Positions 17,870-36,403 of a stretch of DNA of 64,000 bases are shown one piece after another. Both the position numbers and the translations under genes were made by a program. The DNA is taken from IMG/VR virus record IMGVR_UViG_3300031933_000215, positions 1 through 64,000 of that record; one strand, given 5' to 3'. The notes under the pieces are model-generated. The model was not told where the DNA came from. It worked only from the letters and a program-made list of their open reading frames with translations, and did no database searches. How positions within the stretch are numbered: the stretch's first letter is position 1; each line of letters opens with the position of its first letter.

Positions 17870-18559
17870 TTATTGCACAAGACCGTAAGTGTCTTTGATG
17901 TATCGAATCTGTTCGTCCAAAACAATGGTGCGGGCTTTCTGCCACAGATACCGACCGGGTTCGGTGTACAGGTGAAGGCCATTGACAAACTCCCGCTGTT
18001 TTTCAACAAACGCTTTGGGTTCGATCATGTTGCCGGTCATTACCGCGATTTCTTTGCGCAGCCCACCAACGACATGCGCCACCCCAACCGTACTGAAACT
18101 GTATAACACATCCGCATCGCGAATGCAGCGTTCCAATTCGGTGGTGGGGGTGTGGATGAACGGAAATTCAGTCACCCGAATGAGCGCTTCAACTTCGTCG
18201 AAGTCGATGCCACGGTCACGGGTCTTTTGACCCAGTCCGGTCTCAGCAAACCAACGTAGACCAGCGATTGCCCGGTCAATGTTTTCCCGATCAGACAGTT
18301 TTCCGCCACTGTGATCGAAATCGTGAAACAGACACGCCAGTACCAACGCCACCTCGGGTTTACGCCCCACATACAGGTTAGAGGTCAACAACAACTGGTC
18401 TGCAATTCGGGCCATGTGATACAGATGCGTGTTGTTGTGGTACGGCAGATCGCCGGAGGGATTATTGGCTTGGACCCATTCCCACACGGGAAGGAGTTTC
18501 AATACCTTCAGACGAAAACGAAACAGTGTGTCTTGAACAACGAGATCAATATTCGGCAC
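17870..18559 (-). CDS. HD-domain metal-dependent phosphohydrolase
   Basis: LPYHNNTH...LACLFHDFDH...IRDADVL pattern (H...HD...D). Confidence 0.85.
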   Translation of the reverse strand: MPNIDLVVQDTLFRFRLKVLKLLPVWEWVQANNPSGDLPYHNNTHLYHMARIADQLLLTSNLYVGRKPEVALVLACLFHDFDHSGGKLSDRENIDRAIAGLRWFAETGLGQKTRDRGIDFDEVEALIRVTEFPFIHTPTTELERCIRDADVLYSFSTVGVAHVVGGLRKEIAVMTGNMIEPKAFVEKQREFVNGLHLYTEPGRYLWQKARTIVLDEQIRYIKDTYGLVQ

Positions 18560-18587
18560 AAGTGACAGGCCCTCTTTGGTTATTGTG

Positions 18588-19811
18588 TTACGAGTAATGG
18601 TCTTTGGTCAACGCCCTCAGCGTGATGTACAGCAATACTCCCGTACGCACTGAAGCAATTACTGCCCCATTGCGAGTTGTGACTGCGTTGCGCACCAGCT
18701 TCTCAGTGTGCTGGCGGAGTTTGAGCACCGACGCGTCGGATGAACGCGATGCCATCAGCAGTGATCGCAATTTGGTCAGTAGACCGGGCAGGTCGTTCTT
18801 ACGACCCAAGACCGCTCGGTTACTTTGCAGATAATCAAACGTGTAGAGTAATGTTTCGTTAACAATCTCTTCCAGGTATTTCTGGCTACGCTGGCTGTAG
18901 TTCTTGCTCAGGTACTGAAGCGATTCGCGCAACAGCTTCGGGGGCATGGTGGGCATGGCCGAGGCAATCACGTCCATCAATTCAGGCTTGATCAGGTTGC
19001 TCTCGTTTTGCGCCACCTCGTGCATGTACCGGATGTACGCGCTGTACCCATTGCGTCGGTCCTTCAGCACCATCTCCCCGTCGGTGGAGATCATGGCGTC
19101 ACTGGTGGAGGTGACCCGAACCCCCGCTCGCAGGGTTTCCAGATACACCACGTAGATCTTCTTCACCACTTCCCGAATGCGCCCTTGCGTGTCAGTCACC
19201 ACGCGGATCAAAGACTCGTCCGGTTTGAAGTCTCGGATGGCCCGGCGGTAGATGGAGTTGGGAGACACCAAATCGAACGACCGGGCTTCCAGCAAAGCAC
19301 GCCAAGAGCCGTAACGGCGGATGTCGTACCGACCGGACAGGGCGGCGTAGGTAGCTTGGGCCACCGCTGGGTCGGCGGGGTACTTGAAACGCGGTTGCAA
19401 CAAGCTGGTCAAGAACCGGTAATGGAGTACCATGAACGCGTGGGCTTGGGCTTCTTTGCGGAGCTTCTGAGGAATGCGGGTTTCCCGCTCCAACCGGTGA
19501 GCGATGTAAATGGGGGTGTAGTTGAACACGTCCGACATCACCTTGAAGTCGAAGTTGATCGCTTTCACCGACTTGAAGCGTTCGTGCAGGAGTTCTTCGT
19601 CAACCTCCAACACGTCTTCGTACCACGTTTCCCGGTCAGACTCCAGAAACCGAATGGGGTGGACTCCCATCAGTACCCCACCGAAGAACGCGTTGTGATC
19701 TTCGTTGCGGGTCATGAAATTCTGGGAATAGCGAATGATGCGCTTACACAGGTCTCGGTTGAACTTGACCTGATCAAACTGCTCATCAAACACGGCTTTG
19801 AGGGTGGACAT
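18588..19811 (-). CDS. Conserved phiKZ-like protein (about 407 aa)
   Basis: Long helical ORF with FFGGVLMGVHPIRF; AAGG before the ATG ATT ATG start. Confidence 0.65.
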   Translation of the reverse strand: MSTLKAVFDEQFDQVKFNRDLCKRIIRYSQNFMTRNEDHNAFFGGVLMGVHPIRFLESDRETWYEDVLEVDEELLHERFKSVKAINFDFKVMSDVFNYTPIYIAHRLERETRIPQKLRKEAQAHAFMVLHYRFLTSLLQPRFKYPADPAVAQATYAALSGRYDIRRYGSWRALLEARSFDLVSPNSIYRRAIRDFKPDESLIRVVTDTQGRIREVVKKIYVVYLETLRAGVRVTSTSDAMISTDGEMVLKDRRNGYSAYIRYMHEVAQNESNLIKPELMDVIASAMPTMPPKLLRESLQYLSKNYSQRSQKYLEEIVNETLLYTFDYLQSNRAVLGRKNDLPGLLTKLRSLLMASRSSDASVLKLRQHTEKLVRNAVTTRNGAVIASVRTGVLLYITLRALTKDHYS

Positions 19812-19843
19812 AATCATTACCTTTGCATAAGTTGACTGACGGT

Positions 19844-20272
19844 ATGAAACACCTGTGGGTTGCATTCCATCACTTTACAGACCTAGATCATTGGGTTGAG
19901 GAATCCATCCCGAAGACTTTCATCCCTAGAGAGGTACGTCCCATGAGTCCGGTAACATCTCTAATCAATGACCTGATCGACACCGAGGTTAAGTCTCTGG
20001 CCAATAAGCTGGAGTCGGTGGTACAGTTTGCACACGACGATCGGGGAATCATTGATGCGCCCACTGGCAACCTCACCGTTTTTGCATTGGATCATTTCCC
20101 CTACCTGCAACACCGTTTGCGGGATACCCTGTTGGGAACGAACGGCGAATACGCGGCCGAGCTGCTCGGCGACCTGGGGTTCCAATTCACCACGGCTTAT
20201 TCGGAGCCTCGGGTTTATTTGACCAGCGGTCAATACATCCAGCTGTCCAACCGTGTGAAAGCCCACACCTAA
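19844..20272 (+). CDS. Hypothetical protein
   Basis: ORF followed by a hairpin plus TATGCCGT. Confidence 0.55.
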   Translation: MKHLWVAFHHFTDLDHWVEESIPKTFIPREVRPMSPVTSLINDLIDTEVKSLANKLESVVQFAHDDRGIIDAPTGNLTVFALDHFPYLQHRLRDTLLGTNGEYAAELLGDLGFQFTTAYSEPRVYLTSGQYIQLSNRVKAHT

Positions 20273-20418
20273 AGAGCATATAACCAGGAGTCCCTGTGGG
20301 CTCCTGTATGCCGTTTCCAGATGAAACCGATACGTTGGTCGTCTGTGATCTTTAAACCATCTTATGAAGGCCTGTAGACCGTTACAGGCGTATTAATGCA
20401 ACCCAAATAGGAATCGAC

Positions 20419-20817
20419 ATGTCTGAAACCAACCAGCTCCTCTCTTGCGGACGTTCCAACCAGTTCAAAGTCAAAGACCTGGAAGCCTTCAAGGCCGCCG
20501 TCCAACCCTTTGACGTCACCATAGTGGAAGATGAGGGCGACGATCATACGGTGAGCATCCTGGCCAATGCCCGCAGTGGGATCAGTTTTACCAAAGATCA
20601 ACAACACATCCTGGAGTTGTTGGTTGAGCACCTGACCGACGACTCGGTGGCGATCCTGATGCAGATTGGTTACCGGGCCGATTCGTTGGAGTTGGTGGGT
20701 AACGCCGTGGCGGCGAACAACAAAGGACAGATTCGCCAGATTGACCTGAACTACATCTACCGGATGGCGCAGGACCTGTTGGACGACACGTCCGAAGTGA
20801 CCGCCTGTGCCGACTAG
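20419..20817 (+). CDS. Hypothetical protein
   Basis: TAGGA RBS; phage-typical codon usage. Confidence 0.7.
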   Translation: MSETNQLLSCGRSNQFKVKDLEAFKAAVQPFDVTIVEDEGDDHTVSILANARSGISFTKDQQHILELLVEHLTDDSVAILMQIGYRADSLELVGNAVAANNKGQIRQIDLNYIYRMAQDLLDDTSEVTACAD

Positions 20818-20819
20818 GG

Positions 20820-21240
20820 AAATCGCGCCGGGTCGGCCGCTCAATCCCCACCTGTAGAACCACAGGAGATTGGATGGTGTGAACACTAACCATCCTGCGG
20901 CGGCGGAACACGTATCCCTTTCCGTCAGGACCAAGTAATAGTCTTGTATTCCTATCGTCCCATTAGGACGTATGATAGGAATACAGGACGTGAAGCGATA
21001 GAAAGAGATCTTTACTTTGTTTTGAAAGAGGGAGACGTTAGTCTCCCATCCTTATTTCTTTTTATCTAAAGGACTTTTTTGGTCCTTTAGAATTAATTTA
21101 CTGTCTCTTCCTTATATTTATGTGGGGGACCGAACACGCACGAAGTGGGGGTGAGGGCCCCCACTTCTTTAAGCGTGAAAGGTATCCCTGAATCTGTACC
21201 ATAGTACTTTTTAGTATTTTATTTTTGAGGAAGAGAATCC
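20820..21240. other. Non-coding region with a cluster of strong inverted repeats and an AT-rich tract
   Basis: Hairpins at 20941-20989, 21030-21047, 21065-21091 and 21142-21167; no credible ORF. Confidence 0.6.
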
Positions 21241-21241
21241 C

Positions 21242-21403
21242 ATGCTTAAAAAGCTTCATCAAGGGTATCTCAAACTCATGTGTAAACACAAATGGGTGGA
21301 TAAGACGAAACCCGACGACAAGCACTATCGGATCGGTTGTCGTTTGTGTGGCAAGGAGGTACGCTTGAGCGCAAAGACCCCAAAGTCTCAGAGAGAGAAA
21401 TAG
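21242..21403 (+). CDS. Small putative zinc-binding protein (53 aa; not in the ORF track)
   Basis: GAGGA RBS; MLKKLHQGYLKLMCKHKW...GCRLCGKE with a CxHxW...CxxCG pattern. Confidence 0.55.
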   Translation: MLKKLHQGYLKLMCKHKWVDKTKPDDKHYRIGCRLCGKEVRLSAKTPKSQREK

Positions 21404-21742
21404 CGACTCAGGAAAAAATACGCGCGGGTTATAACCTATGTGGAGTTAGCAACTTCATAGCCATGGGTATTCTCGCAGTTGTCGTAAAATCCTTGCAGTC
21501 TCCGGGTGCTGTAAGGTAACTCTTCGTGGGTTCTCTCTCTCCCTTAGCCCGGCTTCGAATTCAATACTGCCTGGGGTTCGCCCCGGGCTTTATTCCGTCA
21601 CCCTGCAAATCGAAAAGGACAACACCCATGGAAAACATCTTGGTCAATAGCAAAGATTCACTCTCCGCCTCAGAACTATGAGGCTAATCCTGTGGTGGCG
21701 ACAACCCACCCATAACCCAAAGCAACTCTAAGGAGTATACCC

Positions 21743-22623
21743 ATGACTGTTAAAACACGACTCTACGCATGGTCGATACCAGTCAATCCAACCGCACCGA
21801 AGCCCTGGATCAGGACCTGTGCTATTTCATCGAAGAGCTGGACGGCTCTGGTAAGAACCGTAAAGAAAACTACTCGGTGATTGCCAAGGAAGTGGAAAAC
21901 ATCCTGGCGCGTTACCAGCCGGGCGATTTCAACATCGTTCTGTTCTCCATGGCCGGTGGCTCTGGCTCGGTGATCGGTCCTCTGGTGATCAAGGCTCTGC
22001 TGGAAGCGGGTGAAACCGCCGTGGCGGTTCTGGTCGGCTCTGACGACAGTGCCATCTCGGTGACCAACACCATCAACACCCTGAAGTCTCTGGAATCGGT
22101 TTCAGTGATGGTGGGTCAGCCGGTGGTAACCGTGTACCACGAAAACACCGCCGGTGTTCCGCGTAAGGTGATCGACGACGAAGTCGAGTTCGTCCTGCAT
22201 GCCCTGACCGAACTGACCAGTCAGAACAACCGGGAGCTGGATACGCAAGATCTGACCAACTGGGTACAGTACCACAAGGTCTGCCCGGTACGTCCGCAAC
22301 TGTCAGCCCTGTCGGTGTTCGATAACCGTCAGGAAGCGGCCAAGCAGATCGAGCCGATCTCGGTGGCGTCCCTGTACGCCGACCCGGACAAGGACAACCC
22401 ATTCGGCAGCCCGCACTACGCGACCGTGGGCTACCCGCGTGAGGGTACCATGCAACTGTCCGATCAGCTGCACTTCGTGATCAACACCGCCGACATCGAA
22501 GAAACCTTCAATCACCTGACCGAACGTCAGAGCGAACTGAACAAAGCGTACAGCTCGTACCGCCAGCGTAAAGCCGTGGTGGATGTGGACGACGATGTTA
22601 CCGGCGATGGCATGATCCTGTAA
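21743..22623 (+). pseudogene. phuZ: PhuZ phage tubulin, disrupted by an N-terminal deletion and frameshift
   Basis: Body has tubulin signature FSMAGGSGSVIGP, VDTS, DGSGKNR and a C-terminal VDVDDDVTGDGMIL tail. The RBS-led start at 21743 (MTVKTRLYA) is out of frame with the body (ATG 21769), and the GGxG phosphate-loop segment is absent. Confidence 0.8.
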
Positions 22624-22628
22624 CAACG

Positions 22629-22667
22629 ACGACATAAAGGTGGGGTTTCGGCCCCACCTTTTTTTAT
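22629..22667. terminator. Terminator after phuZ
   Basis: AAAGGTGGGG TTTCGG CCCCACCTTT followed by a T-run; ACGACATA on the 5' side. Confidence 0.85.
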
Positions 22668-22678
22668 TTGGAGATTTG

Positions 22679-23188
22679 ATGATGGCCAAGAAGTCAAAGC
22701 ACGATGGTCTTGACGCGTTATTGGCCAAGGAGTTGGGGCTGGAACTACAGACGCAGACATTGCCGTTGAAGAAAGTGCAGACCATGGTCAAAGAAGCCAA
22801 CGGTTTGTATTTCGCCTTTGTGATCGATGGTTATTACTACTACGATACGGTTGAGTCGTGGGCTGGTAGTTTGGGTTGTCGTGTAAAACCCAAGCGGTTC
22901 TTGTTGGAGCCCCGCGTTCGTCAGCGACTGGAACAGCGTCATTACCTCCGATGGTACTTCCACTATGGAACGGCGTTGTATCGGGTACAGATTGCCAAAC
23001 CCAAAGACCTGTTCGATCGCTTGTGGTTTCAACCATGCGACGACAACCCACGGTCGACCAACGTTCTCATTGAGGTTGAATCCATGTTTCTGCGAAAGAA
23101 ACCATTGATGCAACTGCGTGAATCGAAACTGCCTTGGTACGATATTCCTGATCACTGGGAACCTGTAGAAATGAAAAAGCGAGCATAG
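22679..23188 (+). CDS. Hypothetical protein
   Basis: GGAG RBS; followed by a hairpin plus TATGCCGT. Confidence 0.65.
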   Translation: MMAKKSKHDGLDALLAKELGLELQTQTLPLKKVQTMVKEANGLYFAFVIDGYYYYDTVESWAGSLGCRVKPKRFLLEPRVRQRLEQRHYLRWYFHYGTALYRVQIAKPKDLFDRLWFQPCDDNPRSTNVLIEVESMFLRKKPLMQLRESKLPWYDIPDHWEPVEMKKRA

Positions 23189-23325
23189 ACCCTCCCCTGA
23201 TTTGGGGAGGGCTTTATGCCGTTTCTTTTTTTTTGGTTACGGTGCACCGGTGATGGTGCAATGCAAGTAATTAAAAGTTTATATTATCTCAGTGTAATTT
23301 AGTAGAGTTTAGTAAAGGACCCATC

Positions 23326-24333
23326 ATGTTTTATAGCACTGAGTTTAAACGTAATGAAAAACAATGGTTAGTTTTTATAATACTCCATATAAAAACTAAC
23401 TTTAAATATATTGGATATACAAACAGCCCTAAGAGAACACTGATTAATTTTTATTATAAACTAAAACGCGGAACTCACACTAACAAACATATACAAAATG
23501 CATATATGGACGACCCTAGATTGGAGAGAATTTATTTTGGGGTCGATTCTGAAATAGAAGCTATAAAATTAAAATCAATGCTAATTCAACGATACGCTAA
23601 ACGTGGTGAACTTTTTAACATTGATAAGTTAAATAACCACAAAGACAATGACCCTAGGGTTGACATTATTGTAGACAAGGTTGAAATGGACGATAGTGTT
23701 AAATTACCTCCAATGGACAAAAGGAGGTATGAAAGATTTATAGAGTTGCGTTCGAAACCATTCGACACCTTAGCAACCCCGAGTGGTTTACATGTACTGA
23801 CAAATACTGACATACATGCAAAAAGTAGAGTCGTGGGTGTGTATGTCATATACCACCCCAAAACAGGGAAGTATTATGTTGGTAGTACATCTAACCTTTA
23901 TTCAAGAATTGTAGCTCACCTTTCGGGATTAAGAAAAAACAATCACGAAAATAGTTCTCTTAACTTGGCTTTTAAGTCTGATCCGCAGATTGAAATTATT
24001 TGTTATAAGACTGATGACCGAGAGAAAGCATTTGAGTTAGAGCAGGACTTGATGGATAGTAATAAACATAATTTATTCAATAAAGCGTTAGACTCTAAGA
24101 ATAACTTCCACGGTTATATTTACAAGGGAAAACCAATGCCTGACTGGATACGCGAAAAAATTAGCAATTCGAGTAGAATACGTACCGATTTAAAACGAAC
24201 TCCAATTAATATTGATGGTGTTGTTTATTCATCAGTTAGTGAAGCTAGTAGACAGCTCGGTATCAATAAACGAACACTTTTCAGAAGAATACATTCTAAA
24301 ACACATCACAACTACACCCTGCATGTTAATTAA
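23326..24333 (+). mobile_element. Free-standing homing endonuclease gene with two GIY-YIG domains and a NUMOD3/NUMOD1-type DNA-binding tail
   Basis: VFIILHIKTNFKYIGYT and GVYVIYHPKTGKYYVGST, both followed by ...H.N..(L/I)..A; IREKISNS and DGVVYSSVSEASRQLGI; markedly AT-rich relative to flanks. Confidence 0.85.
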
Positions 24334-24385
24334 CATAAACCCACTGGCGGAGACCAGTGGGTTTTGTATGCATTTTTTTTGTTTG

Positions 24386-25183
24386 TTATGGACCACCAAC
24401 AATGGTCCTTATGTGTCGACGGCGTGCTTCGGGGTCGTTGAGGACACTAATTTTCAACCAGCGCCGCAAACCTTCTTGATACATTTGATCGGAGTCGGCG
24501 TAGTTCATGATGGTCTCGCGGAACACCCCGAGCATTTGACCACCAGAGAGCTGCCCTTGGTCCATCGGCACGATCATCTTGTTGTAGATGTAGGCTTTGG
24601 TGGCCAGTACGCACAGCTTGGCAAACTCAGGGATAGCCGGCGGGCGAATGAACGACAAGGCGTCGTCGTTACCCAAACGAACCCGCATGAACGCAGTAAC
24701 GTAAGGCAGATACACAAACCGAGCCATCACGGTGTTGTGGGCGATCAGGTTCAAATACGAGGTCATGGCGGGTGGTACCCGCATCGCGCTGTCCAATACC
24801 CGACGCGTCTCGGAGGCCATGGGTGATTCTGTGTAGTGCAGTGCCATCCCGGCGTTTTGATAACCCAATGCTGCAAAGTGAACCGAATACACCTGAACGA
24901 TTGGGCGGTTCTGAACCACCTCGTTTGGAATGTGGTAGATCACAGTGTACGGATCGGTTTGTTCGGCCCGCACGGGATCTTCCAGTGGAATGAAGGCTTC
25001 GGTACCACCGTGGAGATCCAAATCCACCAAGACCCGGGGGTCGATGATCTGCTCCCGAATTCGAGTGTCTAAAGAGACAACTGTCTGGCTGTTTTGCAGC
25101 TCTTGGGAGATGAATGCTTCGTTGAGGATTGCTTGCGGGATGGAGAAGCGGATCTCATCCAGTGCTTTGGTGATCGGATTCAT
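24386..25183 (-). CDS. Conserved phiKZ-like protein, probably virion structural
   Basis: 265 aa ORF, MNPITKALDEIRFSIP; GGAG RBS. Confidence 0.65.
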   Translation of the reverse strand: MNPITKALDEIRFSIPQAILNEAFISQELQNSQTVVSLDTRIREQIIDPRVLVDLDLHGGTEAFIPLEDPVRAEQTDPYTVIYHIPNEVVQNRPIVQVYSVHFAALGYQNAGMALHYTESPMASETRRVLDSAMRVPPAMTSYLNLIAHNTVMARFVYLPYVTAFMRVRLGNDDALSFIRPPAIPEFAKLCVLATKAYIYNKMIVPMDQGQLSGGQMLGVFRETIMNYADSDQMYQEGLRRWLKISVLNDPEARRRHIRTIVGGP

Positions 25184-25273
25184 AAAAGCTCCTGTGAAGC
25201 CGTCTGAGAGGTTTTCTTGGCGAGGTAATACTCTGGCTCCAGATAGTATACTAAAGGGCGTCAGGCTGCCGTA

Positions 25274-25741
25274 ATGGAACCAGAAATAGATCTACATCAT
25301 AAGGTTGGTGTAGAAGACAACAGACTAAGGACCCACATGTCACAGATACTATCCGGCCCAGCACGGGTTTATGTTTACGACATCACCACCGTCCTACAAC
25401 TGATGCAACCGGTACTCAGTGACATCGAAGCCCACCGCGCGATTTCGGTGTTGGGTGTGGACGGGGTGATTGACGCCTTTTTGGAAAAGACCATTCACGA
25501 TTTCGAAGTCGTTTCGGTGTGGGAACACCTGCCCGGCAGGTACCCCTCCGAACTCAATAATCTATTCATCCGTCAAACCGAGGCGATATCGGAACTCTAC
25601 CGCCAGCTGTATTTCCCGCCAGATTGCGCCGGGTCCATGGCCACAATACGAAGAATACATGGAACGCTCTGGCTCGTGGTCTTCGATCCCATGCAGATTG
25701 GACCCTACGAAAAACCAAAAACAGAACACGTGTTTCATTAA
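25274..25741 (+). CDS. Hypothetical protein, small-gene array member 1
   Basis: First of a tightly packed co-oriented array. Confidence 0.6.
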   Translation: MEPEIDLHHKVGVEDNRLRTHMSQILSGPARVYVYDITTVLQLMQPVLSDIEAHRAISVLGVDGVIDAFLEKTIHDFEVVSVWEHLPGRYPSELNNLFIRQTEAISELYRQLYFPPDCAGSMATIRRIHGTLWLVVFDPMQIGPYEKPKTEHVFH

Positions 25742-25752
25742 GGGCTTAGGCA

Positions 25753-26718
25753 ATGCAAAAAGATGAACAATGTTTTATAGTGCTGGATGTCAACGGCTAC
25801 ATCAACGCGCTGAAACACGCCGTCAATGTGTTTAACCAAACCGGATTGGAACTGAAAGTGGTGCAAGGAACCGAGGAGGTGACGGTTCACCTGGACCCCC
25901 TCCCGACGTTGTGTACCACCCGAGCGCTTCGGGTGTTGTACGCGCTGGTCGAAGAGACTGTCAGTCAACACGTACACTACCGTCTGCACTCAAACCCGGT
26001 TCCGGTTATTGCCCAAACGCTTCGCGACTGCGCCGTACCTAGTGACGAAGACTGCATGATGACCGAGAACTTCCTGTGCAACGAGACGGTCGATGGCGTG
26101 GTATTGGAGTTGACCCGTCAGGTATCGCACCACATTAGCGGGCAGCCCTGGCGGCAATGGCAGGTGATGTCGTCGTCCCACATGTTGGCATTGATCGGCG
26201 GTAAGGATTTCCGGGTGGCCGAATGGGAACGCTTCCACGGTCACGACTACCGCAGTGAAGACGAGTTGTTGCGAGTGAACATCACTTCTACGGTGAACAT
26301 CATTCAGTACAGCATCGGTTACGACCTGGCCATCCCGATCGACAACATCCCCATCCACGCATTGGTGTTGGATACCCTTCGCAGTCATTGCCCGGAGTTT
26401 GTGTTCAAGAACGACCACACGCTCTACCCTAGCATGTTGGATGGCATGGGCGTCAGTGACTACGAAGCGTTCTACCGCAAACACCTGCGCGAACCCATCG
26501 AGTCCTTCGTGCTGATGTTCCTACACAGTCAACTTGAACCGTTCGAGAACTATGATGCCGAACTGACCGATGACTTCCTGTTGGTGGTTACCCGCCGCAG
26601 TAAGACCCGGAGTCAGGAGGAGCGTTTGTACCGGGAACTGCGTCAGAGCATCGACGCTGGTGACTGGCTACCCGAACGGGAAATCCGTTGGATGAGACAA
26701 TATGAGCGAACCCGCTAA
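25753..26718 (+). CDS. Hypothetical protein, array member 2 (possibly two repeated units)
   Basis: 321 aa, about twice the size of its neighbours; FIVLD and LRVNIT strand-like starts in each half. Confidence 0.7.
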   Translation: MQKDEQCFIVLDVNGYINALKHAVNVFNQTGLELKVVQGTEEVTVHLDPLPTLCTTRALRVLYALVEETVSQHVHYRLHSNPVPVIAQTLRDCAVPSDEDCMMTENFLCNETVDGVVLELTRQVSHHISGQPWRQWQVMSSSHMLALIGGKDFRVAEWERFHGHDYRSEDELLRVNITSTVNIIQYSIGYDLAIPIDNIPIHALVLDTLRSHCPEFVFKNDHTLYPSMLDGMGVSDYEAFYRKHLREPIESFVLMFLHSQLEPFENYDAELTDDFLLVVTRRSKTRSQEERLYRELRQSIDAGDWLPEREIRWMRQYERTR

Positions 26719-29395: not shown

Positions 29396-29602
29396 CACCG
29401 ATAGGGGACCTCCGGGTCCCCGCATCTTTATTTTTTTTTAGTCCCCTTTGGAGATAGGAAAAACTACGCGAGGTGTCGATAGTCTAGGAGGCAACTTCTT
29501 TGTATAAACAGACCGCGTTAAACCGAAATCAAGGACGGTTAGCTTCCTCTTTGGGAAGTCATTGGCTCCAAAGTACAAAGGGATTACATAAGGAGAGTCA
29601 TC

Positions 29603-34507: not shown

Positions 34508-36403
34508 ATGGCTATTCATGACGAAAACGAAAAGCAACCGAACAACACTCAGCAGCCGAAGTCCGGTGCTGAGCAACGTACCGCTCAGAACCCGTACGCC
34601 AACCAGCAAACCGCCGGTGGCGCTGCACCCCAGGGAGGCCGCATGGGCATGGGCAGCCTGAACCAACACCTGCGTCGTTCCGGCTCTTACGATCGCAGCG
34701 AGTCCCGCTCTTCTGAGGCCCTGCGCGGTCTGCAGGAAACCCGTCGTGTACTCCTGGAGTCCCAAGCTCTGCAGGACGACTTTGAGCTGATCCGCTTCGA
34801 CCGCGATGCCAACCGCGTTGGCCTGCCGGCCATCCTGGCGACCAAATCCATCAAGCAGCAAGGTCAGGTGTACACCGTGGTTCGTACGCTGCTGCTGGAA
34901 GCTGAAGGCATCCGCCTGCAACCGCGCATCGAGCAGAACGGCATCCAGCGGATCGAGATCCCGACCCGTGCCCAGGACGTGTTCAACGATGTGTACTGGA
35001 ACCGGATCACCGATTTCCTGCGTCGTGCGAAAGGCGTCCAGGACATGACCGTGGTCGATGCTGGTCCGCTGGTGGTACCGGCCGACTTCGATTTCAAGGA
35101 CGACATGGATGTTTCCCGCATCCTGATCTCTTCTGTCAACCGTTGCGATGACATCATCGCTCGTCTGATGGGCGAAGATCCGTTCTCCATCGAGCTGTTC
35201 AAGCGTCAGGAAGAGCGTCTGACTGCGCGAATCGACTTCACTGGTGAGCAGGTCCACAACGTGGTCGGTCACCCGGTCCGTAGCGACGTGGTTGTTACCA
35301 TGAACCGCGCCGTGGCCAACGTTTCCCAGGAAGAAGATTTCTACGAGCGTGAAACCTCGTTCAACAGCGTGGCAGGCTTCATCAACCTGGAATACGCACC
35401 GGCGCCGCAGCAGCAGCAAGTGGCCTGGGGTCAGCAGCAGCCCGAAACCCAACTGTTCACTCCGAGCTTCGTCATCACTGACGTGTCTCAGGCGGACTGG
35501 ATTCAGGCACAGACTCCCGAGCTGTACCTGCTGGCGATCTCCAACGCTTACCGCGTAACTGCTGGTACTGCGTGGGTTCGTAGCTTCCTGCCACAGGTTG
35601 GTAAGGAAGGTGTGGACACTCGTGACATCGGCGCGCTGGGCTACATGACTCAGGCCGGTCAGAAGATCGAAACCAAGTCCGATAGCTTCACCGACGAGGA
35701 CTTCGTGAAACTGATGACCGCTCTGGTTCGTCCGAACCCGTCGTTCCTGATGGACGTCGACCCGGTTGGTGATCACGCTGCCATCGAGAACTACTTCGTG
35801 GACGCAGCTTTCGAAGGTCCTAACCAGCAGAAGGCGAACCAGAAGCTGATCCAGGCAGCCGACAACCTGACCGGTGGTCGTTTCTCCACTCACTTCAACG
35901 CGCGGGAAAACGCTCTGGTGATCCCGTACGGCCAGGAAGTGCACACCGGTTACTACATCGGTGAAGACGGTGAGAAGCGGGACATCCGCGATCTGGACGT
36001 TCTGGCCATGCTGAACCTGACCAAGGGCAACGTGTCCGACTTCATGGAATGGTACCGCACCCTGTGCGATAACACCATGCCTCCGGGCGTACGTCTGCAG
36101 CAGCGTGAGCGTTACGAACGTCAGTTCCTGGACAAGGGCCTGAAGATCACTGGTCGTGCAATTCGCCTGCTGCTGACCCCGGCGGCCATCGAGGCGCTGG
36201 ATGCAGCAACTCGCGAAGCAGGTCTGCACGTGGACATGGAAAACGTTACCAGCGTCATGGGCGCTCAGCGTTTCGTGGGCAACACCATGATCAACCAGTA
36301 CACAGTAAGCCGCAACGCCAACATGGGTTACGGTCAAGCCAACAACGGTCCGGCCTCCGGTCCGGCTCACGTTGGTGTGACTTCCAGCGGCCGCATGTAC
36401 TGA
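34508..36403 (+). CDS. chmA: Chimallin, major phage nuclear shell protein (phiKZ gp54-like)
   Basis: 631 aa with disordered N- and C-terminal segments; very strong codon bias; lies between DNA polymerase and the nvRNAP beta' gene, the position of chimallin in phiKZ/201phi2-1. Confidence 0.85.
   Translation: MAIHDENEKQPNNTQQPKSGAEQRTAQNPYANQQTAGGAAPQGGRMGMGSLNQHLRRSGSYDRSESRSSEALRGLQETRRVLLESQALQDDFELIRFDRDANRVGLPAILATKSIKQQGQVYTVVRTLLLEAEGIRLQPRIEQNGIQRIEIPTRAQDVFNDVYWNRITDFLRRAKGVQDMTVVDAGPLVVPADFDFKDDMDVSRILISSVNRCDDIIARLMGEDPFSIELFKRQEERLTARIDFTGEQVHNVVGHPVRSDVVVTMNRAVANVSQEEDFYERETSFNSVAGFINLEYAPAPQQQQVAWGQQQPETQLFTPSFVITDVSQADWIQAQTPELYLLAISNAYRVTAGTAWVRSFLPQVGKEGVDTRDIGALGYMTQAGQKIETKSDSFTDEDFVKLMTALVRPNPSFLMDVDPVGDHAAIENYFVDAAFEGPNQQKANQKLIQAADNLTGGRFSTHFNARENALVIPYGQEVHTGYYIGEDGEKRDIRDLDVLAMLNLTKGNVSDFMEWYRTLCDNTMPPGVRLQQRERYERQFLDKGLKITGRAIRLLLTPAAIEALDAATREAGLHVDMENVTSVMGAQRFVGNTMINQYTVSRNANMGYGQANNGPASGPAHVGVTSSGRMY

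What the first reader, a model, noticed from the sequence alone, without database searches (positions are those of the whole stretch)
21743..22623. phuZ tubulin has lost its N-terminal GTP-binding loop by a frameshifting deletion
The true start (TAAGGAG RBS, ATG 21743) gives MTVKTRLYA, matching the phiKZ PhuZ N-terminus as recalled (KVKTRIYFCGGAG...). The sequence then jumps directly, out of frame, to (M)VDTS. The roughly 20 residues in between, including the CGGxG phosphate-binding loop, are absent, and the body frame has a TAA at 21751, so nothing upstream can supply them. The phage would therefore have chimallin but no working spindle for centring and rotating the nucleus or moving capsids. 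PhuZ has been reported as non-essential in phiKZ, so a natural loss is plausible. The rest of the gene is intact and codon-optimised, so the lesion is recent or an artefact.
Basis: partly seen in the sequence, partly recalled or inferred. Interest (0 to 1): 0.7.

Follow-up and report, generated by a model that had tools for sequence, protein, structure and literature searches.

The report
Phage tubulin gene broken by deletion
In this uncultivated nucleus-forming jumbo phage, a 61-base deletion seen in no sampled relative has removed the GTP-binding loop of the tubulin gene phuZ and shifted its frame, giving a fresh natural knockout of a gene already known to be dispensable.

Summary
ATG 21743, behind an AAGGAG ribosome-binding site, encodes MTVKTRLYA, the PhuZ N-terminus. 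The reading then runs out of frame. The rest of PhuZ (284-codon ORF, 21769-22623) is in another frame, closed upstream by TAA 21751.

Near-identical phages from at least five other samples carry exactly 61 extra bases between 21771 and 21772. These encode CGGAGVNLGQRVNPEMIQPCY and give an intact 313-aa PhuZ. That segment holds the near-invariant GGxGxN loop, helix H1 and most of strand S2.

The deletion junction occurs only in the source data set, but in every assembly of it, so it is in the reads and is not an assembler error. An intact allele is identical to the window for 734 nt upstream and 590 nt downstream of the break. The remaining codons differ from relatives almost only synonymously. 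The lesion is therefore very recent.

The genome has no second phuZ and no spare N-terminal piece. Its chimallin gene is intact.

Most likely this phage makes a nucleus but no PhuZ spindle. That fits published work: ΔphuZ ΦKZ is viable, and PhuZ has been lost repeatedly among chimalliviruses. I class it as a new instance of a known kind, of modest interest.

The parts
21731..21736 (+). Shine-Dalgarno sequence AAGGAG of phuZ, 6 nt upstream of the true start codon
   Evidence: Read directly. Identical in the intact alleles L006-L009.
21743..21769 (+). Surviving 5' end of phuZ: codons 1-9, MTVKTRLYA, which form strand S1
   Evidence: 100% identical to residues 1-9 of the intact allele P0001. Matches PhiPA3 MSKVKTRVYCCGG and phiKZ gp039 VKTRIYFCGG.
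21771..21772 (+). Deletion junction. Relatives have 61 nt here (TGGCGG...GTGCTAC), completing codon 10 and encoding residues up to Y30.
   Evidence: read laying reports '61 letters between' in X3, X4 and X6, 64 letters with 3 skipped in X7, and a loose end in X5. DNA alignment to L006. blastn to L006-L010.
21743..21880 (+). The 45-codon ORF that ribosomes starting at the true start would now translate. It has 9 PhuZ residues, then 36 out-of-frame residues, then TGA.
21769..22623 (+). phuZ body ORF (284 codons) in the other frame, equal to residues 31-313 of the intact protein behind a fortuitous ATG. It has no Shine-Dalgarno sequence, and TAA 21751 closes the frame upstream.
   Evidence: 100% identical to P0001 over 283 residues.
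22637..22667 (+). Likely intrinsic terminator after phuZ: a GGTGGGG...CCCCACC stem followed by a T run
   Evidence: Read by eye. Not scanned with a tool.
34631..36376 (+). Chimallin (nuclear shell protein) gene, intact. It marks the genome as a nucleus-forming phage.
   Evidence: 45% identity to PhiPA3 gp053 over residues 13-596 of 602, E 1.3e-162, no stops.

Best explanation
A real, evolutionarily very recent 61-bp deletion in the phuZ gene of one population of an uncultivated ~232-kb chimallivirus (gas-well or rock metagenome).

The deletion removes codons 10-30. These cover the end of strand S1, the T1 nucleotide-binding loop GGAGxN, helix H1 and most of strand S2. It also shifts the frame. 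Ribosomes starting at the only good start site make a 45-residue nonsense peptide. The remaining 284-codon ORF lacks a ribosome-binding site, and even if translated it would lack the phosphate-binding loop and part of the core of the GTPase domain.

The phage therefore most likely builds its chimallin nucleus without a PhuZ spindle. By analogy with ΦKZ ΔphuZ, the nucleus would be mispositioned but the phage would still replicate.

Shown: the deletion, its size, its restriction to this one data set, its recency, the absence of a spare copy, and the intact chimallin gene. Inferred: the loss of function, the phenotype, and the viability of the phage.
For: Deletion size and position. Contigs from runs X3, X4, X6 and X7, and a loose end in X5, carry 61 extra nt exactly at 21771|21772, while source runs X1/X2 match the window with 0 differences. 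Five fetched loci carry the intact 313-aa gene: L006 (JGI 3300018405), L007 (ENA ERZ27245760, 229.8 kb), L008 (JGI 3300009194), L009 (SRR5818261) and L010 (SRR25046491, 226 kb).

Content of the missing piece. The intact protein equals the window's 9 aa, plus CGGAGVNLGQRVNPEMIQPCY, plus the window's 283 aa. In 52 homologs, G11 is invariant and G12, G14 and N16 are at least 90% conserved. All four lie in the deleted piece. The AlphaFold2 model of the intact allele (pLDDT 92) places S1 at 5-10, H1 at 11-18 and S2 at 27-32.

Restriction to the source. Junction k-mers occur only in X1/X2. The junction 28-mer in metagenome contigs occurs only in the source contig.

Recency. L006 is identical to the window for 734 nt upstream and 590 nt downstream of the break. 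Synonymous versus non-synonymous differences in the body are 14/0 against L006, 30 synonymous plus one changed codon against L007, and 40/0 against L010. There is no other frame-disrupting difference in 22 kb. The only other indel, at 29431, is intergenic.

No backup. There is one phrog_4733 match in the 231,818-bp genome. No GGxGxN-type N-terminal motif and no significant tblastn hit occur elsewhere.

Literature. ΦKZ ΔphuZ mispositions the nucleus but has a normal burst size (10.1101/2022.02.14.480438). PhuZ lies outside the chimallivirus core genome and has been lost several times (PMC11724907).
Against: Only assembled contigs were available, not raw reads. A minority intact allele in the source sample cannot be excluded. 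Nor can a lesion introduced during library preparation from low-biomass material, such as amplification from few template molecules.

X1 and X2 are probably one data set filed twice, so the deletion rests on a single sample.

No expression or phenotype data exist. The deletion has no microhomology or hairpin that would explain how it arose.
Confidence: 0.85

Rival explanations
1. Artefact. The deletion is not in the natural phage population. It arose during library preparation or amplification, or it is a rare variant that the assemblers happened to follow.
For: The deletion allele is seen in a single small data set (X1 = X2, 111 million letters, depth about 9-12). Every other sample has the intact allele. 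Logan contigs drop rare variants, so co-existing intact molecules would go unseen.
Against: Several assemblies of the source data carry the same junction: the Logan contig, the ENA SPAdes contig and a 231,873-bp contig. With no microhomology at the junction, a de Bruijn assembler cannot invent the junction k-mers, so they are in the reads at consensus depth. No contig with the intact allele was laid from X1 or X2.
Confidence: 0.08
2. The deletion was selected rather than neutral or mildly harmful. It could be an escape from a host defence that targets the phuZ transcript or DNA (for example Cas13). Alternatively the N-terminally truncated PhuZ is made and poisons the spindles of co-infecting intact relatives.
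For: Losing PhuZ to avoid Cas13 targeting has been proposed in the literature (PMC11724907). The deletion-bearing genome was abundant enough to assemble completely with terminal repeats. The truncated ORF keeps the T7-loop region and the acidic C-terminal tail.
Against: A 20-mer from the deleted segment gave only three chance matches in 185,579 species genomes and no CRISPR spacer, although this test has low sensitivity. ATG 21769 has no Shine-Dalgarno sequence and lies inside the ORF translated from 21743. The allele is not seen in any other sample.
Confidence: 0.06
3. The gene is not broken. The N-terminal segment is supplied some other way, such as a split gene, a second exon or recoding.
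For: None was found. The only prompt is a homing-endonuclease cassette 1.5 kb downstream, which shows that mobile elements are active in the region.
Against: Relatives have one continuous ORF with the 61 nt in place. Rfam finds no intron in 18000-26000. No GGxGxN motif or N-terminal homolog is encoded elsewhere in the genome. Frameshifting alone could not restore 21 missing residues.
Confidence: 0.01

Closest known systems
PhuZ of Pseudomonas phages phiKZ (gp039, PDB 3ZBP/3ZBQ), 201phi2-1 (gp59, PDB 3R4V, 3RB8, 3J5V) and PhiPA3 (gp028)
   Same: The intact allele of this gene aligns end to end with all three (E 4e-63 to phiKZ gp039, 7e-47 to 201phi2-1; about 40% identity to PhiPA3). It shares the N-terminal VKTRxY-xGGxG motif, the GGSGS signature loop and the acidic C-terminal tail.
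   Different: The window's copy lacks residues 10-30 and is frameshifted. Its lineage is only about 40-43% identical to any isolate's PhuZ, so it belongs to an uncultivated clade of ~230-kb chimalliviruses.
Engineered ΦKZ ΔphuZ (Guan et al., bioRxiv 10.1101/2022.02.14.480438)
   Same: A chimallivirus with chimallin but no functional PhuZ.
   Different: That mutant is a designed, clean gene deletion with a measured phenotype: a mispositioned nucleus and a normal burst size. This one is a spontaneous 61-bp internal deletion in an environmental genome, with no phenotype data.
Natural PhuZ-less chimalliviruses (Erwinia phage Asesino clade; Vibrio phages Ariel and pTD1; PMC11724907)
   Same: Natural loss of PhuZ in a phage that keeps the nucleus.
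   Different: In those phages the gene is gone altogether, through older losses. Here the gene is still present and otherwise undamaged, and sister strains at about 97-100% nucleotide identity keep it intact, so the loss is at its very first step.

Membership tests
PhuZ (phage tubulin/FtsZ-like GTPase; phrog_4733; Pfam Tubulin + TubZ_C_2) | Significant sequence match to the family profile | tested here: met
   phrog_4733 E 8.5e-94, but only profile positions 39-323 of 323. TubZ_C_2 1e-31. The Tubulin GTPase domain scores 25.3 bits, below its 33-bit cut-off, and matches only profile positions 85-173.
PhuZ (phage tubulin/FtsZ-like GTPase; phrog_4733; Pfam Tubulin + TubZ_C_2) | N-terminal strand S1 followed by the T1 nucleotide-binding loop GGxGxN and helix H1, in one reading frame with the rest | tested here: not met
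   Residues 10-30 are absent and the frame is shifted. G11 is invariant, and G12, G14 and N16 are at least 90% conserved in 52 homologs. The window's copy is therefore a broken member (pseudogene) of the family.
PhuZ (phage tubulin/FtsZ-like GTPase; phrog_4733; Pfam Tubulin + TubZ_C_2) | Tubulin signature loop (GGSGS, T4) and acidic C-terminal tail used for filament contacts | tested here: met
   SMAGGSGSVIG and the C-terminal VDVDDDVTGDGMIL are present in the body ORF and aligned with the homologs.
PhuZ (phage tubulin/FtsZ-like GTPase; phrog_4733; Pfam Tubulin + TubZ_C_2) | GTP-dependent polymerisation and nucleus centring | not testable with these tools
   This needs biochemistry or microscopy.
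Chimalliviridae (nucleus-forming jumbo phages) | [quoted passage not shown] | tested here: met
   Window 34631-36376: 45% identity to PhiPA3 gp053, E 1.3e-162, no stops.
Chimalliviridae (nucleus-forming jumbo phages) | Shares the roughly 68-gene core genome, including the multisubunit RNA polymerases | not tested
   Only phiKZ-type neighbours were seen in passing in the relatives' gene tables: PhiKZ_VTX, phiKZ_gp29PR, divDNApol.

The most novel reading that the evidence does not exclude
The deletion is an adaptive event caught in the act. On this reading, a subsurface chimallivirus population was swept by a phuZ-null variant because the phuZ transcript, DNA or protein was being targeted or sensed by a host defence. 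Alternatively, the leftover N-terminally truncated tubulin is expressed and sabotages the spindles of co-infecting intact competitors.
Probability: 0.06. Interest if true: 0.7.

Novelty: new member of a known kind. Interest (0 to 1): 0.3.

Why it matters
PhuZ is the best-known phage cytoskeletal protein, yet laboratory work shows it is dispensable and comparative work shows it has been lost repeatedly. It remains unclear why so many phages keep it.

This genome gives a natural isogenic pair. A phuZ-null phage and intact sister strains differ by almost nothing else around the gene, and they come from real environments. This supports the view that PhuZ loss is tolerated outside the laboratory. 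It also shows what the first step of such a loss looks like.

For annotation, the 284-aa 'tubulin' ORF in this genome should be flagged as a pseudogene fragment, not as a functional PhuZ.

Tried and rejected
(1) Intron or split gene. Rfam (E-value mode) on 18000-26000 gave only sub-threshold noise. Motif and tblastn scans of the whole genome found no spare N-terminal piece.

(2) Close relatives in isolate phages and IMG/VR. Megablast against the phage collection found nothing. The peptide-pattern scan and an exact 41-mer of the intact allele in viral contigs found nothing. Relatives were found only through the protein database and Logan/JGI/ENA contigs.

(3) Deletion as an imprecise recombination joint. 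Against L007-L009, the window goes from 0-4 mismatches in 10 kb upstream to about 2.6% downstream, starting 66 nt after the junction. However, the intact allele L006 and an X4 contig share the window's sequence on both sides, and mosaic blocks are frequent downstream. The boundary therefore predates the deletion, and I rejected this idea.

(4) Slippage or hairpin mechanism. There is no microhomology at the junction. The fold has z = 0.26. Only a weak 9-nt inverted repeat flanks the site. The mechanism remains unexplained.

(5) CRISPR-escape test. A central 20-mer of the deleted segment in genome contigs gave three hits inside ordinary coding sequence that share only about 21 nt with the segment and have no match to the phage genome. 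This is negative but insensitive.

(6) Homologs that natively start at 'DTS'. P0034 is cut by a contig end that begins with adapter sequence. P0047 is itself frameshifted.

Full report
**Observation**

- AAGGAG lies at 21731-21736, 6 nt before ATG 21743.
- That ATG opens a 45-codon ORF, MTVKTRLYAWSIPV...*, ending at 21880.
- A 284-codon ORF starts at ATG 21769 in another frame and ends at TAA 22621-22623.
- In that second frame, TAA sits at 21751-21753, so the frame cannot be extended upstream.

The 284-aa product matches PHROG 4733 'tubulin PhuZ' at E 8.5e-94, but only over profile positions 39-323 of 323. It matches Pfam TubZ_C_2 at 1e-31. Its match to the Tubulin GTPase domain is sub-threshold and partial.

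Aligned with PhuZ of PhiPA3 and of Xanthomonas and Pseudomonas jumbo phages (about 41-43% identity), the body begins at the conserved 'DTS'. MTVKTRLYA matches PhiPA3 MSKVKTRVYCCGGTG and phiKZ gp039 VKTRIYFCGGAG in PDB 3ZBP.

**What is missing, and is it real**

The window is the first 64 kb of a 231,818-bp viral contig with direct terminal repeats. Public runs that hold this DNA were found, and their Logan contigs were laid on the region.
- Source data set (X1, a gas-well metagenome, and X2, a rock metagenome). Both have the same size and the same 37,120-bp contig, so they are probably one data set filed twice. The contig matches the window with 0 differences, deletion included.
- Independent samples: X3 (subsurface), X4 (freshwater), X6 (groundwater) and X7 (oil production facility; a 226-kb contig at depth 95). 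All carry 61 extra letters exactly between 21771 and 21772.
- X5 (freshwater). A contig ends in a loose stretch that reads ...VNPEMIQPCY in frame with VDTS.

A protein search found a 313-aa protein, P0001, that is 100% identical over the window's 284 aa. Its cluster holds the window's own 284-aa product plus further 313-aa members on contigs of 226-230 kb.

Five loci with the intact gene were fetched. The DNA alignment shows the window lacks TGGCGG...GTGCTAC, 61 nt. Together with the two bases TG that remain, this makes 21 codons: CGGAGVNLGQRVNPEMIQPCY, residues 10-30. Since 61 is not a multiple of three, the frame shifts.

The 30 junction-spanning 31-mers were used as a query, and only X1/X2 hold them. 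A 28-mer across the junction occurs in JGI/ENA metagenome contigs only in the source contig, ERZ1673962 NODE-3.

Several assemblies of the source reads agree, and the junction has no microhomology. The junction k-mers must therefore be in the reads, so this is not an assembler error. Raw reads could not be inspected. A minority intact allele, or an artefact of library preparation, cannot be formally excluded.

**Recency and selection**

The intact allele L006 is identical to the window for 734 nt upstream and 590 nt downstream of the break. L009 shows 0 mismatches over 6,274 nt upstream.

| Compared allele | Synonymous differences in the phuZ body | Non-synonymous differences |
|---|---|---|
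| L006 | 14 | 0 |
| L007, L008, L009 | 30 | 1 changed codon |
| L010 | 40 | 0 |

They show strong purifying selection in the lineage and no decay since the deletion. In the 22 kb compared, the only other indel is a single intergenic base at 29431. phuZ is therefore the one broken gene in the region.

**What the deletion does**

In 52 homologs, G11 is invariant and G12, G14 and N16 are at least 90% conserved. All four lie in the deleted piece. An AlphaFold2 model of the intact allele (mean pLDDT 92.1) has strand S1 at 5-10, helix H1 at 11-18 and strand S2 at 27-32. By established knowledge of the tubulin/FtsZ fold, the GGxG turn at the start of H1 is the T1 loop, which holds the nucleotide phosphates.

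The deletion thus removes the T1 loop, H1 and most of S2, and it separates S1 from the rest of the protein.

Ribosomes starting at the only start site with a Shine-Dalgarno sequence make a 45-residue peptide. ATG 21769 has no Shine-Dalgarno sequence and lies inside that translated ORF. Little or no truncated PhuZ is expected, and any that is made should not bind GTP. This step is inference.

**No backup, and the nucleus is kept**

The genome has a single PhuZ-profile match. It encodes no GGxGxN N-terminal motif and has no significant tblastn hit to the N-terminal 42 residues anywhere else. Rfam finds no intron nearby. Chimallin is intact at 34631-36376, 45% identical to PhiPA3 gp053 at E 1.3e-162.

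**Mechanism of the deletion**

This is unexplained. There is no microhomology, no significant hairpin (z = 0.26), and only a weak 9-nt inverted repeat outside the endpoints.

A sharp change in divergence against L007-L009 near the junction looked at first like a recombination joint. However, intact alleles (L006 and an X4 contig) share the window's sequence on both sides, and mosaic blocks are common downstream. The boundary is therefore older than the deletion.

A low-sensitivity test for CRISPR spacers against the deleted segment was negative.

**Comparison with what is known**

ΦKZ ΔphuZ mispositions the nucleus but has a normal burst size and host range (10.1101/2022.02.14.480438). PhuZ lies outside the chimallivirus core genome. 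A clade making up 24% of known chimalliviruses lacks it, and other lineages, such as Vibrio phage Ariel, lost it more recently (PMC11724907).

The present case is another natural loss. It is unusual only in being caught at its first step, with intact sister strains at about 97-100% nucleotide identity.

**Verdict**

| Item | Assessment |
|---|---|
| Observation | Confirmed |
| Artefact of assembly | Excluded |
| Artefact of library preparation | Unlikely |
| Novelty | New member of a known kind |
| Interest | About 0.3 |

Noticed in passing
window 23249-24374: A 1,126-nt cassette of 34% GC (the genome is 53%) carries a 335-aa GIY-YIG homing endonuclease with an I-TevI-type DNA-binding domain (ORF 23326-24333). 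It sits in the intergenic terminator region two genes downstream of phuZ. Relatives L007-L010 lack it at that site, and X3 and X4 contigs diverge from the window at 23239. It is single-copy in the genome. It is a second difference private to this genome, 1.5 kb from the deletion. No link between the two was shown.
   Followed up: partly
L018:1400-1560 (JGI 3300061639 contig; protein P0047): A distant relative (41% identical PhuZ) also has a frameshifted 5' end. MSKGVVRLYSCGGFGINLGAG... is in one frame and ...VKCAFIDTS in another, consistent with a 1-nt indel between the T1 loop and S2. Whether this is a sequencing error or a second natural phuZ lesion was not resolved.
   Followed up: partly
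window 21242-21403: A 53-aa Cys/His-containing ORF lies in the otherwise ORF-poor 800 nt upstream of phuZ and is called as a gene in all relatives. All 10 substitutions against the X7 contig fall on third codon positions, so it is a real gene under purifying selection. Its function is unknown.
   Followed up: partly
window 21648|21649 compared with L010:9587-9906: The more divergent relative from an oil-production-facility metagenome (226-kb contig) has 320 extra nt here, carrying a 113-aa gene just upstream of phuZ.
   Followed up: no
window 11743-33773 compared with L007, L008 and L009: Strains from different samples and studies are 99.96-100% identical to the window over 10 kb upstream of phuZ (tail and virion genes). 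Downstream they form a mosaic of blocks with 0% to about 5% divergence. This points to frequent recombination, or to a recent sweep of the upstream block.
   Followed up: partly
L019:1-35: The 900-bp Logan contig that gave the apparently 284-aa homolog P0034 begins with Nextera-type adapter sequence (...AGATGTGGTATAAGAGACAG). That short 'PhuZ' is a contig-end artefact.
   Followed up: yes
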